A stretch of 64,000 nucleotides of DNA, taken from positions 33,367 through 97,366 of the forward strand of contig MCFE01000314.1 in the NCBI GenBank assembly GCA_002104905.1, in the 5' to 3' direction. Positions 16,156 to 23,504 of this stretch are shown here, in pieces. The stretch comes from Basidiobolus meristosporus CBS 931.73. Its lineage: Eukaryota > Fungi > Basidiobolomycota. The position numbers were made by a program, and so were the translations under genes. Within the stretch, counting starts at the first letter, position 1; every line of letters begins with the position of its first letter. The notes beneath the pieces are model-generated. The model saw only the letters and a list, made by a program, of their open reading frames with translations, had not been told where the DNA came from and did no database searches.

Positions 16156-19100
16156 ATGCCATCCGATAAAAGCAGCCGGTCCACGAAGTCGACCCACTCA
16201 ACAAGGACCAGCGTTGGCAGAACCAACAGAGCGAATATCAACAAGAATACAACAGGACAAAACAACTCCTCGAGTCTTACTCGACCCTTTGAAGCCAGCC
16301 TTGATTCCGATTCTTATCCTTCGCCAAAGAGGCAACGTACAATAGCAGAAATGTTTACTACAAACGGACAAACCTCCACTGGAAAAGCTCGTGAAGAAAA
16401 CCCAAAGTTGACTGTCCAGTCCAGTCAGCAGTCATATCACTCGTCTAATGGTTCCACGTCTGCTGGAGGCTTTGGGTTCTCGATACCTAGTGGTTCTTCA
16501 GGTTTCAACACTAATAAAGAGAATATAACCTCCTCCAAACATGACCAAACGTTCGGGAAGAACCTCAGTCAGAACGGTTCGTTTAACTCTTCGAATAACT
16601 CCCGGATTGGCTTGGGCAAAACCCCAGTTAAGAAACTAGTCATCAAAAGCTTCAAAGGTCTAGTTGTTTATACAAGTGCTTCGGATATAGTATCATAGGA
16701 CCTTTTTTACTAATACTACCTTATTTAGTCAAACCCAAGCTTCCTGAAAATTACGAATCAGACACCTGGGAGAAGCTTAAAGGAGCTGTCAAAGCTGTAC
16801 ATGAAAGCCAGCCGGTTCCTGATAGTCTGGAAGAGCTTTATAAAGTCTGTGATGGTATTTTCCTTCGAACCATTCCGTTTTCTCATATTAATGAGCCTCA
16901 TTTAGGCTTGTGAAAATCTATGCCATCATAAAATGGCGAATTCATTATATCGAAAGCTTAAAGCGGAATGTGAATCGCATGTCGTAGAGGAGCTGGGAAA
17001 ACTCAAAAAGTACAGTACCTTGCTCATTATAACCGCCTTTGCACTCTTGTTCTGAGCATGTTTCTGAACAATTAATAGTAATATCACCACGAATGAGATC
17101 TTTCTAGCTGCTGTCGACAATTGCTGGAAAAACCATTGTCGTCAAATGGTAAATAGTCCTCCACAATCTTTTGCGAACTGAGTTAACATGCCATATCAAG
17201 ATCATGATTAGAAGTATATTTTTATACCTTGACCGGACCTATGTGTTACAGACCTCCGGTCTCTCTTCCCTCTGGTAGGCAACCTGGGATTACAGTATCC
17301 AACAACATGAGGCTAACCACGTCACGAACGAACAGGGATATGGGGTTGGATCTGTATAGGGACTACGTTATGGAGTCTAAAGAAATCCGCAAAAAAACAC
17401 TCGATGGACTACTTGGTTTAATAGAAAAGGAAAGATCTGGAGAATCAATCAATCGGGCTATCCTCAAATCGCTGTTGAGGATGTTCATTGACCTAGGAAT
17501 TTACTTCAGCGGCTTCGAAAGCGCATTCCTGGAATCTACGGAGCTATTCTACCGCAAAGAGAGTGACACCCGAGCCCACGGATTGGAGGTATCGAGCTAT
17601 CTTCTCTATGTTGAGCAGAAATTACAAGAGGAGAAAGATCGGACTCTTCATTATTTGGACAAAGAAACAAGGAAGCCTCTCATTGAGTTAATCGAAAGGG
17701 AGTTGATTGCAAGGCCTGTATCCTTGCTTCTTGAAAAAGGATTTGATGGCTTGGTTGCAAATGACCAAAAAGAGGATCTTTCGCGCTTGTATTCGCTTCT
17801 CGCTAGAGTCGGCCATCTAAACCAACTGAAAACTTTCTTTGGCGTTTACGTCAAGAAAGCAGGACTTGAGATCGTGACCGATGTCAGTAGAGACAACACT
17901 ATGGTGCAAGACCTGCTAAATTTCAAGCTCAAATTGGATGGGATCCTTGCGACCAGTTTCCAGCAAAACGAAAGCTTCTTCAACACTTTGAAGGAAAGCT
18001 TTGAGTCGTTCATTAATGTTAGACAGAACAAGCCAGCCGAAATGATCGCCAAATTTGTCGACTCGAAACTCCGCACTGGAAACAAAACTGCCACGGACGA
18101 GGAGCTTGAGAGCATTTTGGACAACGTTCTTATCTTGTTTAGATTTATCCAGGGCAAGGACGTATTTGAAGCGTTCTATAAACGTGATTTAGCCAAACGT
18201 TTGTTGCTCAACAAGAGTGCCTCTTTCGATGCTGAGAAGTCAATGCTATCAAAACTCAAGACCGAGTGTGGGGCTAGTTTTACTAGTAAATTGGAAGGAA
18301 TGTTTAAAGACATGGACGTATCTCGAGACATTATGATTTCCTTCCGTCAGACTCAGAAATACCAAGAGTTGTGCAAAGATATCGAACTCAACGTATCGGT
18401 TCTTACCCAAGGATACTGGCCAACTTACACCCCGACTGAGATCACTCTGCCAGAGCAAGTAAGTCAGATTGCTGGTATATTTTGCCCTAGGCACCACACC
18501 TCAACCATTCATCCAACTACAGATGACCGAATATCAAGAGGTGTTCAAGGCATTCTACCTGAGTAAGCATCATGGCCGTCGTTTGATGTGGCAACATTCA
18601 TTAGGTCATTGTGTTCTTAAGGCATACTTCCCCAAGGTGATTCTTATATGCATTGACCATGACGTTGGCCAAACGCTAATCTGCTTCATTCGATGATAAG
18701 GGGAAGAAAGAGCTTGCAGTATCGCTATACCAGGCTATGGTTCTGCTATTGTTCAATAGTATGGAAATCGACGCTAAACTAAGCTACAAGGAAATTTCTG
18801 CAGCGACTAATATAGGTTTGTCCTAAGATGATGTAGCGAATTTGCTCAGTCTGGCTAATCATGCAATGCTTGATCTAGAGCTGAAGGAGCTTGAACGCAC
18901 TCTGCAATCCTTGGCCTGCGGGAAAGTTCGAGTATTGACCAAGTATCCCAAAGGGCGAGAGATCGCTGAAACCGACAGTTTCTCCTTCAACAAGGACTTC
19001 ACTGCCCCGCTTTTCAGAATCAAAGTTAACGCTATTCAAATGAAAGAGACGGTAACATGGCTTTTGATCTGATTACGGGCTGAACCTCAAGTTAAAACCC

Positions 19101-19417
19101 TTCCCATTGTCAGGTTGAGGAGAACACCAACACCACCGAGAGAGTATTCCAAGACCGCCAGTATCAGGTAGATGCGGCCATTGTTAGAATCATGAAGACA
19201 CGGAAGCAGCTAAGCCACACCCTGCTCATGAACGAGCTTTTTGAACAACTCCGGTTCCCAGTGAAGGTATGTGTAGCGCGCTGGACATTGATTCGATGTA
19301 TGCTAATCTCATCCAATGCAGGCCTCTGATCTCAAGAAACGAATAGAATCATTGATTGATCGGGAGTATTTAGAGCGAGACAAAACCGATACGAGTGTAT
19401 ATAACTATCTGGCCTAA
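16156..19417 (+). CDS. CUL4: Cullin-4, multi-exon
   Basis: [27 protein letters not shown]-terminus; cullin homology ([40 protein letters not shown]); [17 protein letters not shown]; neddylation domain ([18 protein letters not shown]...EREYLERDK). Confidence 0.94.
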
Positions 19418-19914: not shown

Positions 19915-21691
19915 ATGAACAAAGCGCCTCATTTACGTATTAAGCTTTCCCACAGAGGGGAGACCAATCTAGTTTTCGTTCAAGGTATTCCTCTAGCCTA
20001 TTCCCTTATTTTTGAAGCCCATTTTGCGGGAAACATTGACTTCTAATTTTTACACCGGATCACTTCATATAAATGCACATTGTTTGACCTTTTTACTTGC
20101 AACGTTTTTATCTAGAAGAGAATCTTAGCTTCGATCTTCTTGTGACACAGTTCCAGAAGGAGTATCCTGATTTTCAATTGAGTGATTACAGATTGCTATG
20201 GAAAGATATTGAAGGAGACTGGGTTTCAATAGCCGGTAACCTATCCAGCGCCCAGTTAGTTACGACATACTTATTAACAATGTTGTGATCCTAAAGAGGG
20301 CAACGATGCTTGGAAATATTTGAAAGAAACTGTCAAGCAAGGGCATCCAAGAATCCACGTCAAATCCCGAATTTCGGATGAAGTATAGCTTCACAGTCAT
20401 GTTGTCTCTACACAGAATCGTTTTCGCTAACGTCGGAGGGGGGGTTTCTTTGTAGAATTCGACGCCGGAGAACTGCGCCAAAAACCGCACCTGTGTTTCC
20501 AGCTTGATAAACAGATACTCCAAAGTCACCACCTCAATAAGTGAACTGAAGTCCTACTTGGTCGAGCTTGAGATAGTTACCACCATCGTAATAGTGACCA
20601 AACCCACGCCAGAGCTAGTAAAGCACACCAAACTGGTGGCGGTTTGGCTTTTGGAGAAGTACAAGAACCTAACCGTTTATGTGGGAGACACTTTCAAACA
20701 AAATCCAGCCTTCAGCTATGAGACTCTCTCTGCAGAAAGCCCCACCATCGTGGACAGATTGAAATTCTGGTCGCGGCAGGACTTCCCAGAATGTGTGGAC
20801 TTGGCCGTCACCCTCGGTGGTGACGGGACAGTACTTTATACCTCCCTGCTATTCCAGAGGAAGGTGCCACCTATCCTCTCGTTCCACCTGGGATCGTTGG
20901 GATTCCTGACCGTCTTCAACTTTGGACAATTCCAAGAGACTCTTGGCCATATCATTGATAGTCAGTCGATTCACGCAAACCTTCGAATGAGAATCAAATG
21001 CACCGTATACAAGCGAATCACCAACTGTGTGTCGGACATAGAGAATCTGACGGATCCCAGCAGTGAGCCAAGCATATGCAACCTCTGCCTTGACGACCCG
21101 GTGGGTGAGAACTCATGCTCGCTGTCGAAGTGTGGAGTGCATCATGTGTTGAACGAGTTGGTGGTGGACCGTGGGGCGAACCCCAACATGGTGATGTTGG
21201 AACTGTTTGTCGACAATACACATTTGACAACCATCCTAGCGGATGGACTGGTCATTGCCACTGCAACCGGATCCACCGCCTACTCATTGTCTGCTGGAGG
21301 CTCGCTCATCCATCCGGAAATGTGTGCCATCCTGGTGACTCAGATCTGCCCACACACCCTGACCTGTCGACCGATGGTGATTCCTGGATATAAAGAGCTC
21401 AGGATATGTGTGCCACCCCAAGCAAGAAGCACAGCATGGGTAAGTTCCACTCCCGACGATTTGCTCACCATCCAATACTAACCCCGCCAATAGGCCTCGT
21501 TTGATGGACATCACCGGGTGGAGCTGAATCGTGGGGACTCGATCACCATCACCGCCTCTAACTACCCGCTACCATCGATCTGCAAAGATGACCAGTCAAT
21601 AGATTGGTTCAACGGATTACGTAAGGTGTTGAACTGGAATGAAAGACAGCGTCAAAAACCGTTTCACTCCGACTCATGGGACATCGAATAA
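19915..21691 (+). CDS. ATP-NAD kinase with N-terminal PB1 domain (5 exons: 19915-19984, 20116-20235, 20297-20382, 20456-21439, 21494-21691)
   Basis: NADK motifs: VTLGGDGTVLY, FHLGSLGFLT, VLNELVVDRG, ADGLVIATATGSTAYSLSAGGS, LNWNERQRQK. Upstream exons splice in frame to give RIKLSHRGET...YRLLWKDIEGDWVSIA (PB1 basic Lys plus OPCA-like motif). The NADK call is firm; the 5' exon joins are manual. Confidence 0.88.
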
Positions 21692-21954: not shown

Positions 21955-23504
21955 TTAAAGGGAGGTTTCGGACCGGAAGGCATTGGTGTTGTCCTGGAAG
22001 TTGGCGATATTCTGGGAGCATTCCCGCTTGATGTTCTCCGCCTTGGGCGTGTCCCATTCACCACGAGACAAGAAGTTTCTAAAATAGCGGAAACACGCCT
22101 CCTCCCGGAAATTCTTGTACACCTGCTTGTTGAAGTTGCGCTAGAGAAATGCGTTAGTCGCTGGAGGGGCTGTGCGTGATGGATTGTTTGCTCCTACCTC
22201 GATTCTGCGAGTGTTTTCAAGGTAATCATGATTTTGATGAATAATGAAATCCTGGGGCAAGACCCAGTAATCCACCCCCGAAAGATAGATTTCGTAGAGA
22301 CACGCGGCTTTGTTTCCTCCGTATCCGATGAAGCGCTCGTTGCACCTGGTGATCCAAGTTAATACGTGGCCATGGAGAAGGTACCTGAAATTCCCCTTAC
22401 CATGGGACTCCATCTTTCTTGACAATAACATAGGGCTCATAGCTGTAGTTGTAGTCGGTGACTTTGTATGGAGTAATGGCTTCATACCAACGGGTATAGT
22501 TGGTGGACCCATGTCCTCGGACCCAGCTTTTATGGAACATGGAGATTTTCCCTGCTCCCACCAAATCAACCAGGCTGGACTTCACTCGGGGAAAGACCTC
22601 GGCGTCACGTCCCTCATCCAGGACATCGTATTCGAATGCTGGCAAAACAATCGCCGCATTCCCCTCCCTCAGTCTGTTCATCAGCTCGGGGTGCTCTTGC
22701 AGGCTCTGGCGGAAATCAGTGCACAAATAAAAGTCGATGTCCAGGAGTAGGAAGTAATCGGTTCGGGTAAAGAACCGGGCCACATTTCTCCAATAATTGA
22801 ACTGTCTCTCGTAGGTGTCGATGATCAGGTGGACATCTACATGCTTCTTCATGAGCGGATTGGAAGTGTACATCTCCTCCAACTTGTTGAGGATTTCCAT
22901 TTTGTTTTTGTCGTCTGAGACGTGAAGTGCCACCGAGACAGGGCCTATACAAAGATGGTCAGTAGGTTGGAGCAAAATGGGCGTGTGTCGGAGGAACCTA
23001 CCTTTGTAGTTGTTCACCAGCTTCTCAAAGACATGGAAACGATCGGCGGTGATCAAAGTGGCGACAGTAATGTCTTCTTTAGGAGGAGCCGGCTCCATTC
23101 TGTAATAATAAGGCTTGAGGTTGGTGGGCTGCATTGCTTCCGAAAACAGCTTGGAGTAGATGTATTCTTCGGGGAAAGGTATAGAAGAACCTAGAAACCT
23201 GGGTTAAACTCCGCGCGGCATGACAACCCCCTCCCAATACTACTCTACCTTTCTCACTCGTCAACAAGAAATTCTCAGTGTTGGTTTTGGGAGCAGGCTG
23301 AGCGGGCTTGCTAGGGTGCTCAACCTTCTCAGGGGTGTGATAGGGCGGCCTAGTCACTTGCGGGGCGTGGGTGGAAGTGGAAGTGGAAGGGGGCTGGGCA
23401 TGAGGAGATGCGTAGAAAGAGTGGAATATGTAGAAGATGGAGAGCGCCAGGTAAGCCAGAAACAAGAATTTGAAGATGCGGGAGTAAGAAAACTCGACTC
23501 TCAT
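21955..23504 (-). CDS. Glycosyltransferase family 49 (LARGE/B4GAT1-like), type II membrane protein
   Basis: N-terminal TM; DITVATLITADRF; YWRNVARFFTRTDYFLLLDIDF (DxD); VLPAFE; YEPYVI; ...YLSGVDYWVLPQDFIIHQNHDY; FREEACFRY. Confidence 0.88.

What the first reader, a model, noticed from the sequence alone, without database searches (positions are those of the whole stretch)
19915..21691. PB1 domain fused to an NAD kinase: candidate NADP(H)-supply module for a Nox/polarity scaffold
Seen: three small upstream exons missed by the ORF track splice in frame through GT-AG junctions to the NADK ORF. They give MNKAPHLRIKLSHRGETNLVFVQEENLSFDLLVTQFQKEYPDFQLSDYRLLWKDIEGDWVSIAEGNDAWKYLKE.... This has both the conserved beta-1 Lys and the acidic DxEGD (OPCA) motif of a type I/II PB1 domain. 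Established: fungal PB1 proteins (Bem1/BemA, Cdc24, NoxR) assemble the NADPH-oxidase/polarity complex by PB1-PB1 contacts, and characterised NAD kinases (Utr1, Yef1, Pos5, human NADK) are not known to me to carry PB1. Inference: this NADK could be docked on NoxR/Bem1/Cdc24, or self-polymerise, coupling local NADP+ synthesis to ROS production at growth sites.
Basis: partly seen in the sequence, partly recalled or inferred. Interest (0 to 1): 0.75.

Follow-up and report, generated by a model that had tools for sequence, protein, structure and literature searches.

The report
NAD kinase with a PB1 docking domain
This Basidiobolus gene really encodes an NADP-making enzyme (NAD kinase) with a PB1 protein-docking domain at its front; the design is old, conserved in early-branching fungi and apparently unstudied, and its proposed link to NADPH oxidase is untested.

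Summary
At 19915-21691 (+) lies a five-exon gene of Basidiobolus meristosporus. All four introns are GT-AG, and the product is 485 aa. Exons 1-3 encode a PB1 domain and exons 4-5 a complete NAD kinase. The public model for this gene (353 aa, "partial") lacks the PB1 exons.

Two B. ranarum proteins (485 and 490 aa) match the window exon by exon. A predicted structure of the closest one shows a confident PB1 fold, and its best structural neighbours are solved PB1 domains. The beta-1 Lys and the acidic OPCA motif are conserved across the family.

The fusion is not unique. Forty of 180 fungal NAD kinases retrieved carry it: chytrids, Syncephalis, Basidiobolus, Glomeromycota, Mortierellomycota and Calcarisporiella. 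In a tree of 69 of them, the PB1 carriers fall in one well-supported clade that holds no Dikarya or Mucorales protein. Databases name some members "PB1 domain-containing protein". No paper I could search discusses PB1 with NAD kinase.

The Nox/polarity docking idea is untested, and the family's distribution does not follow that of Nox.

The scan already reported the paralogue on another piece of this genome (s1-202318) with the same conclusion.

The parts
19915..19984 (+). Exon 1: start codon and PB1 strands beta-1/beta-2, with the conserved Lys (K10) and His (H13)
   Evidence: Sequence read; ORF from the first ATG after a stop; tblastn to P0001/P0003 residues 1-23
19985..20115 (+). Intron 1 (131 nt, GT..AG)
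   Evidence: similarity to the orthologues stops here; its length breaks the frame if retained
20116..20235 (+). Exon 2: PB1 helix alpha-1, strands beta-3/beta-4 and the OPCA acidic motif
   Evidence: Pfam PB1 E=0.007 on this exon alone; 71% identity to P0001
20236..20296 (+). Intron 2 (61 nt, GT..AG)
20297..20382 (+). Exon 3: PB1 helix alpha-2 and strand beta-5
   Evidence: 76% identity to P0001 residues 64-92
20383..20455 (+). Intron 3 (73 nt, GT..AG). If retained, the frame reads GAA GTA TAG, a stop two codons in
20456..21439 (+). Exon 4: linker helix (about 20495-20548), NAD kinase N-domain with GGDG, a Cys-rich insert (about 21023-21115), and most of the C-domain
   Evidence: Pfam NAD_kinase 3e-21 and NAD_kinase_C 3e-28; translation; 100% identical to public partial model P0002
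21440..21493 (+). Intron 4 (54 nt, GT..AG, holds an in-frame stop)
   Evidence: P0002 reads across it as ...STAW|ASFDG...
21494..21691 (+). Exon 5: end of the NAD kinase C-domain, C-terminal helix and stop codon

Best explanation
The gene encodes a catalytically intact, probably cytosolic NAD kinase. An N-terminal PB1 domain is joined to the kinase through a disordered stretch and a conserved helix.

Shown: the exon structure, the PB1 fold and both canonical PB1 interaction faces, the intact kinase motifs, and the age and conservation of the fusion.

Inferred: because both the basic face (beta-1 Lys) and the acidic OPCA face have been kept across phyla, the domain most likely makes front-to-back PB1-PB1 contacts. 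The simplest reading is head-to-tail self-association. NAD kinases are already oligomers (solved as tetramers), so this would link them into higher-order assemblies and control where, or in what state, NADP+ is made. Heterotypic docking is the close second.

I put about 0.9 on the fusion being real and about 0.4 on self-association as the main role.
For: - Gene model.
- Pfam. P0001 scores PB1 E=5e-4 over residues 7-75; 9 of 60 homologues reach E<=0.01, best 1e-5.
- P0003 has a precomputed PF00564 hit and the UniRef name 'PB1 domain-containing protein'.
- A language-model search of P0001 residues 1-92 gave PB1 clusters for 26 of 30 hits, top score 0.92.
- In a profile search against PDB sequences, most non-kinase hits, and every one on the N-terminal part, are PB1 domains: Cdc24 at E 0.1, then NBR1 and PKC zeta.
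- AlphaFold2 model of P0001 with 29 homologues: the 10-residue blocks spanning residues 11-90 average pLDDT 90-96, and strands and helices run beta-beta-alpha-beta-beta-alpha-beta.
- Structure search, residues 2-90: NBR1 PB1 Z 10.6, MEK5/MEKK2 10.2, PKC iota/Par6 9.8, Cdc24 9.8, p62 9.3, p40/p67phox 9.2. Other ubiquitin-like folds score 8.2 or less. The kinase part matches human NADK at Z 31.9.
- Conservation in 29 family members: position 10 is K in 24 and R in 4; D54 in 28; an acid at 56 in 27; D/E58 in 23.
- A local HMM finds the domain in 40 of 180 retrieved NAD kinases.
- Tree: one clade with SH-aLRT 100 holds all 35 PB1 carriers placed in the tree.
Against: - No transcript data are available, and the orthologue models are themselves predictions.
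- The window's joined protein was not scanned. PB1 scores of exon 2 (16.7 bits) and of P0001 (20.3 bits) lie below Pfam's 23.6-bit cut-off.
- Sequence matches to solved PB1 domains are weak (E 0.1-2).
- Self-association was never tested. No multimer prediction and no inter-domain confidence were available.
- Spizellomycete members have an OPCA one residue shorter, and it is degenerate in S. palustris.
- aPKC-type PB1 domains also keep both faces yet use them for two different partners.
Confidence: 0.6

Rival explanations
1. Heterotypic docking: the PB1 domain tethers the kinase to another PB1 protein such as Bem1, Cdc24 or NoxR. NADP+ would then be made at growth sites, next to NADPH oxidase or other NADPH users.
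For: The domain has both PB1 faces. The best sequence match among solved PB1 domains is Cdc24 (E 0.1). The p40/p67phox PB1 pair is among the structural neighbours (Z 9.2). In plants a regulated NAD+ kinase sustains the Rboh oxidative burst (bioRxiv 10.1101/521658, abstract). NoxR and Nox exist in at least one chytrid (PMC4206789).
Against: No interaction data exist. The match to Cdc24 is not significant and no better than those to NBR1, PKC or MEK5 by structure. The family is absent from all Dikarya hits and from Allomyces and Blastocladiella, although those lineages have Nox and NoxR (PMC4206789). So Nox function does not need it. A single partner would require only one conserved face.
Confidence: 0.25
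2. Intramolecular regulator: the PB1 domain folds back on the kinase, or on the conserved linker helix, and gates activity. This would resemble the autoinhibitory N-terminal region of human NADK, with no PB1-PB1 partner.
For: The solved NADK chains match the model only from about residue 119-134 onward, so the N-terminal region is the variable part of the family. That human NADK is regulated through its N-terminus is from my own knowledge, not tested here. A conserved helix (residues 106-123) links PB1 to the kinase.
Against: Residues 93-102 between the PB1 domain and the helix are predicted disordered (pLDDT below 50). Conservation is concentrated on the canonical intermolecular faces.
Confidence: 0.1
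3. Not a fusion: exons 1-3 form a separate small PB1 gene, or are chance ORFs, and the kinase starts elsewhere.
For: The public model P0002 omits these exons. Retaining intron 3 would end a 94-aa PB1-only product.
Against: Exon 4 has no Met before the kinase core. Only 73 nt separate exon 3 from exon 4. The three exons line up with orthologues in three frames, exactly at GT-AG sites. Forty gene models from independent annotations in several phyla join the two domains.
Confidence: 0.03

Closest known systems
Eukaryotic cytosolic NAD kinases (human NADK, PDB 9cr3/8kgc/3pfn; yeast Pos5, PDB 3afo)
   Same: Both Pfam domains are present, along with the GGDG, NE..DRG and TGSTAYSLSAGG motifs. The fold matches at Z 31.9 and 30.8.
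   Different: None of the solved or Dikarya enzymes has a PB1 domain. Their N-terminal regions are unrelated. This clade also has a variable insert between the two kinase domains.
Type I/II (AB) PB1 domains that polymerise or bridge partners: p62/SQSTM1 (4uf9), NBR1 (2g4s, 6tgn), aPKC (1wmh, 4mjs)
   Same: Same ubiquitin-like beta-beta-alpha-beta-beta-alpha-beta fold, a Lys on beta-1 and an OPCA acidic motif in the beta-3/beta-4/alpha-2 region. Z is 8.9-10.6 over 80-85 residues.
   Different: Here the domain is attached to a metabolic enzyme, not an adaptor or protein kinase. Sequence identity is only 7-19%. A family-specific His replaces the usual aromatic residue three positions after the Lys (the comparison to the usual aromatic is from my own knowledge).
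Fungal PB1 polarity/Nox scaffold proteins Cdc24, Bem1, NoxR (Cdc24 PB1: 1pqs, 1q1o, 2kfk)
   Same: Same domain family. Cdc24 is the top PB1 hit by sequence profile (E 0.1) and scores Z 9.8 by structure.
   Different: Cdc24 and Bem1 each use one face (from my own knowledge), whereas this domain keeps both. No evidence of interaction. The distribution does not follow Nox.
Plant CaM-dependent NAD+ kinase NADKc (bioRxiv 10.1101/521658)
   Same: A functional analogy only: an NAD+ kinase with a regulatory N-terminal module that feeds an NADPH-oxidase burst.
   Different: It has an unrelated catalytic fold (zeta-toxin-like P-loop) and is regulated by calmodulin, not by PB1.

Membership tests
NAD kinase (Pfam PF01513 + PF20143) | Both Pfam domains above their gathering scores | tested here: met
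   Exon 4: NAD_kinase 76.3 bits (cut-off 25.5) and NAD_kinase_C 98.3 bits (cut-off 23.7)
NAD kinase (Pfam PF01513 + PF20143) | Catalytic motifs GGDG, NE(L/V)..DRG and the Gly-rich TGSTAYSLSAGG | tested here: met
   All three are present in the exon 4 translation. They are invariant or nearly so in 60 homologues
NAD kinase (Pfam PF01513 + PF20143) | NAD kinase fold | tested here: met
   Model of orthologue P0001 (90% identical): Z 31.9, rmsd 2.3 over 294 residues to human NADK. This was done on the orthologue, not on the window's joined protein
NAD kinase (Pfam PF01513 + PF20143) | ATP-dependent phosphorylation of NAD(H) | not testable with these tools
   Needs an enzyme assay
PB1 domain (Pfam PF00564) | Match to the PB1 profile above the gathering score (23.6 bits) | tested here: inconclusive
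   Exon 2 alone scores 16.7 bits, E 0.007. P0001 scores 20.3 bits, E 5e-4. P0003 carries a precomputed PF00564 hit. The joined window protein was not scanned
PB1 domain (Pfam PF00564) | Ubiquitin-like beta-grasp with beta-beta-alpha-beta-beta-alpha-beta order, closest to solved PB1 domains | tested here: met
   Ten PB1 entries at Z 8.9-10.6 rank above UBX and ubiquitin folds (8.2 or less). Done on orthologue P0001
PB1 domain (Pfam PF00564) | Type II/B face: conserved Lys on strand beta-1 | tested here: met
   K10 lies in strand 6-13. K or R in 28 of 29 family members. Present in window exon 1
PB1 domain (Pfam PF00564) | Type I/A face: OPCA acidic motif D-x-(D/E)-G-D followed by a later acid | tested here: met
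   The window reads D-I-E-G-D and then an Asp nine residues on. D54 in 28 of 29, an acid at 56 in 27 of 29, D/E58 in 23 of 29. One residue shorter in Spizellomycetales
PB1 domain (Pfam PF00564) | Binds another PB1 domain | not testable with these tools
   No multimer prediction or binding assay was available
Nox / polarity complex component (partner of NoxR, Bem1, Cdc24) | Physical interaction with a complex member | not testable with these tools
   None
Nox / polarity complex component (partner of NoxR, Bem1, Cdc24) | Occurs together with Nox/NoxR across fungi | tested here: not met
   No PB1-NADK among the Dikarya, Allomyces or Blastocladiella hits, although Nox and NoxR are reported in filamentous Dikarya and Allomyces (PMC4206789). 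The sample is limited to the best 120 hits of two searches. Nox status of Basidiobolus and Mortierella was not checked

The most novel reading that the evidence does not exclude
A metabolic enzyme is placed or switched by a signalling-type scaffold domain. PB1-driven head-to-tail polymerisation, or docking at polarity sites, would organise NAD kinase tetramers into filaments or foci. Early-branching fungi would then control NADP(H) supply in space, a layer of regulation that Dikarya lost.
Probability: 0.35. Interest if true: 0.7.

Novelty: new variant of a known kind. Interest (0 to 1): 0.5.

Why it matters
NAD kinase is the only route to NADP(H). How cells regulate it is known in only a few cases, such as calmodulin in plants and sea urchin and N-terminal phosphorylation in humans.

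A PB1 module kept on one NAD kinase paralogue since before the chytrid/terrestrial fungal split points to a different mode of control, by assembly or localisation. PB1 domains are otherwise typical of adaptors and signalling kinases, so a PB1-bearing metabolic enzyme is unusual.

The family offers a clean test system: point mutants of the Lys and OPCA faces, and tractable species such as Mortierella alpina or Spizellomyces punctatus.

The finding also corrects gene models. The public B. meristosporus models of both paralogues, and probably several zoopagomycete and Mortierella models, lack the PB1 exons.

Tried and rejected
Orthologue DNA, intron positions in other species and a PB1-only reference sequence could not be obtained.
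- A word-based search with only the PB1 region of P0001 found just P0001 and P0003. It is too insensitive for this short, divergent domain, so it says nothing about absence elsewhere.
- phmmer of exon 2 against PDB sequences gave only chance hits such as P450 and glycoside hydrolase.
- Foldseek on the full-length model listed only NAD kinases. The PB1 neighbours came from the exhaustive VIA-align run.
- A metagenome scan with Linnemannia P0006 returned four contigs, none reaching the N-terminus.
- Literature: no paper holds both 'PB1 domain' and 'NAD kinase'. The seven holding 'PB1' and 'NAD kinase' appear unrelated by title and abstract (influenza PB1, metabolic engineering, reviews).
- Exons were searched one by one by reference, and the full-length B. 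ranarum orthologue P0001 served as proxy.
- The large representative search (search of protein representatives) was not used. It gives no names or taxa, so it would not settle the distribution.
- I rejected the reading of the domain as a generic ubiquitin-like fold. PB1 entries outrank UBX and ubiquitin entries, and the PB1-specific motifs are conserved.

Full report
**Origin of the window**

The window comes from Basidiobolus meristosporus CBS 931.73. The 353-aa public protein 'ATP-NAD kinase, partial' (P0002) is 100% identical to the translation of the long ORF at 20504-21481 and its continuation.

**Observation**

Exon 1 (19915-19984) starts at the first ATG after an in-frame stop. Exons 2 (20116-20235), 3 (20297-20382), 4 (20456-21439) and 5 (21494-21691) follow. 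All four introns begin GT and end AG. The phases fit: 70+120+86 = 276 nt gives 92 codons, then 328, then 65 plus the stop, for 485 aa in all.

Introns 1-3 are 131, 61 and 73 nt, so retaining any of them breaks the frame. Intron 4 carries an in-frame stop. Exon 4 has no Met before the kinase core, so the kinase needs the upstream exons.

tblastn of the two B. ranarum proteins against the window gives colinear matches that end at the proposed junctions. Exon 1 matches residues 1-23. Exon 2 is 71% identical, exon 3 is 76% identical, and exons 4-5 are 87% identical. P0001 has exactly the predicted length of 485 aa.

Exons were scanned separately by reference, and P0001 (90% identical over exon 4) served as the full-length proxy.

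**What the two parts are**

Exon 4 passes both NAD kinase Pfam models. It contains the GGDG, NE..DRG and TGSTAYSLSAGG motifs.

Exon 2 alone hits Pfam PB1 at E=0.007. Full-length P0001 hits PB1 at E=5e-4 over residues 7-75. That is 20.3 bits, just under the 23.6-bit cut-off. P0003 carries a precomputed PF00564 hit and the UniRef name 'PB1 domain-containing protein'.

A language-model search of P0001 residues 1-92 returned PB1 clusters for 26 of 30 hits, with a top score of 0.92. A profile of 29 family members searched against PDB sequences finds the NAD kinases first. Most of the remaining weak hits, and every one on the N-terminal part, are PB1 domains: Cdc24 at E 0.1, then NBR1 and PKC zeta.

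AlphaFold2 on P0001 with that alignment gives a mean pLDDT of 80. The 10-residue blocks spanning residues 11-90 average 90-96. The order of elements is beta(6-13), beta(16-23), alpha(29-39), beta(48-53), beta(59-62), alpha(67-77), beta(82-89), which is the PB1 topology. Residues 93-102 are disordered, and a helix at 106-123 leads into the kinase.

Foldseek on the whole model saw only NAD kinases. The exhaustive VIA-align search gave these neighbours for residues 2-90:

| Solved structure | Z |
|---|---|
| NBR1 PB1 (85 residues aligned) | 10.6 |
| MEK5/MEKK2 PB1 | 10.2 |
| PKC iota/Par6 | 9.8 |
| Cdc24 | 9.8 |
| MEKK3 | 9.7 |
| p62 | 9.3 |
| p40/p67phox | 9.2 |
| AtNBR1 | 8.9 |
| UBX, ubiquitin and other beta-grasp folds | 8.2 or less |

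The kinase part matches human NADK at Z 31.9.

**Binding faces**

K10 lies in strand beta-1. The D-x-E-G-D run lies in the beta-3/beta-4 hairpin, with a further acid before alpha-2, which is where the OPCA motif sits in known PB1 domains.

Across 29 members from five lineages, position 10 is K in 24 and R in 4. D54 is kept in 28, an acid at 56 in 27, and D/E58 in 23. F36 is invariant, and a family-specific His (H13) is kept in 26. Spizellomycete members have an OPCA one residue shorter.

**Distribution**

A local HMM of the PB1 part finds it in 35 of the first 120 NAD kinase hits and in 40 of 180 after a second search seeded with the Synchytrium protein. The carriers are:
- Chytridiomycota: Synchytrium, Spizellomyces, Gaertneriomyces, Powellomyces, Geranomyces, Thoreauomyces, Rhizophlyctis, Phlyctochytrium
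- Syncephalis
- Basidiobolus
- Glomeromycota: Rhizophagus, Glomus, Funneliformis
- many Mortierellomycota
- Calcarisporiella

In a quick maximum-likelihood tree of 69 proteins, a branch with SH-aLRT 100 separates two groups. One is a 25-protein clade with no PB1, which holds all the Dikarya, Mucorales and Blastocladiomycota hits. The other is a 44-protein clade with all 35 PB1 carriers placed in the tree.

Nine proteins in the second clade lack PB1. Six are short or truncated models: the window's own P0002, its paralogue P0004, and the Podila, Thamnocephalis, Piptocephalis and Borealophlyctis models. Three are chytrid proteins with a different N-terminus.

The window gene pairs with B. ranarum P0001, and its paralogue P0004 pairs with P0003, so the duplication predates the two species. 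The tree is unrooted and was made by the quick method, so a single ancient fusion is the parsimonious reading, not a proven one.

No non-fungal carrier appeared, but both searches list only the best 120 hits. I do not claim absence elsewhere.

**Literature**

No paper in the searchable library holds both 'PB1 domain' and 'NAD kinase'. The seven that hold 'PB1' and 'NAD kinase' appear unrelated by title and abstract.

The scan itself had already reported the paralogue on another piece of this genome (s1-202318) with the same conclusion. The same stretch was also read in an overlapping window (s1-197667).

**Mechanism**

Shown: an intact kinase tethered to a PB1 domain with both canonical faces, conserved since before the chytrid/terrestrial split.

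Inferred: keeping both faces is what one expects of PB1 domains that bind front-to-back, either to themselves (p62, plant NBR1) or to two partners (aPKC). NAD kinases are oligomers (solved as tetramers), so a self-binding PB1 would link them into larger assemblies. I take this as the most likely role, at about 0.4.

Nothing here tests it. The match to Cdc24 is not significant. The family is also missing from Nox-bearing Dikarya and from Allomyces in my sample, while NoxR occurs even in Mucorales that lack Nox (PMC4206789). The plant NADKc case shows that a regulated NAD+ kinase can feed an oxidative burst (bioRxiv 10.1101/521658), but that enzyme is unrelated.

An intramolecular regulatory role is a third option, at about 0.1.

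**Context**

The end of a cullin gene lies upstream on the same strand, with its stop at 19417 (Cullin and Cullin_Nedd8 hits). This leaves about 500 bp before the start codon. A GT49 glycosyltransferase lies downstream on the minus strand.

**Limits**

- No transcript evidence is available.
I therefore could not compare intron positions or fold the PB1 domain alone.
- The large representative search was not used.

**Verdict**

The architecture is a conserved, database-visible but unstudied family, not a one-off. The Nox link is speculation.

Noticed in passing
window 21023-21115 (residues about 282-312): There is a low-confidence insert between the two kinase domains. It holds C-x2-C plus two more Cys in this gene (C-N-L-C ... 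C-x5-C). A C-x2-C with an upstream Cys recurs in chytrid members, whereas Mortierellomycota have a long acidic insert instead. It may be a small metal-binding loop.
   Followed up: partly
window 20383-20388: If intron 3 is retained the frame reads GAA GTA TAG, so a 94-aa PB1-only product is possible as an isoform.
   Followed up: no
P0002, P0004, P0011, P0033, P0056, P0067: Public models of both B. meristosporus paralogues, and of the Podila, Piptocephalis, Thamnocephalis and Borealophlyctis members of the PB1 clade, are short or start after the PB1 region. They are probably truncated annotations, not losses. P0067 still shows what looks like the tail of the PB1 domain.
   Followed up: partly
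P0054, P0089, P0062 (Chytridium, Dinochytrium, Blyttiomyces): These chytrid members of the PB1 clade have no PB1 domain. In the first two, the N-terminus is Arg/Ser-rich and looks like a mitochondrial presequence. This suggests the N-terminal module was swapped.
   Followed up: partly
P0122 (890 aa), P0126 (811 aa), Mortierellomycota: The PB1 domain sits at residues about 296-399, behind a hydrophobic, membrane-protein-like N-terminus. These are probably merged neighbouring gene models.
   Followed up: no
P0163 (766 aa, Logan assembly, organism unknown): This is a PB1-NADK relative with a roughly 90-residue N-terminal extension before the PB1 domain. Its source organism is not identified.
   Followed up: no
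window 18842-19417 (+) and 22397-23134 (-): The neighbours are the C-terminal exons of a cullin (Cullin and Cullin_Nedd8 hits) upstream, and a Glyco_transf_49 family gene downstream on the opposite strand.
   Followed up: partly
P0121 (Drosophila willistoni, 860 aa): An insect NAD kinase isoform ranked third (493 bits) in the search seeded with the Synchytrium protein, above most fungal relatives. It has no PB1 domain. The reason for the high score was not examined.
   Followed up: no
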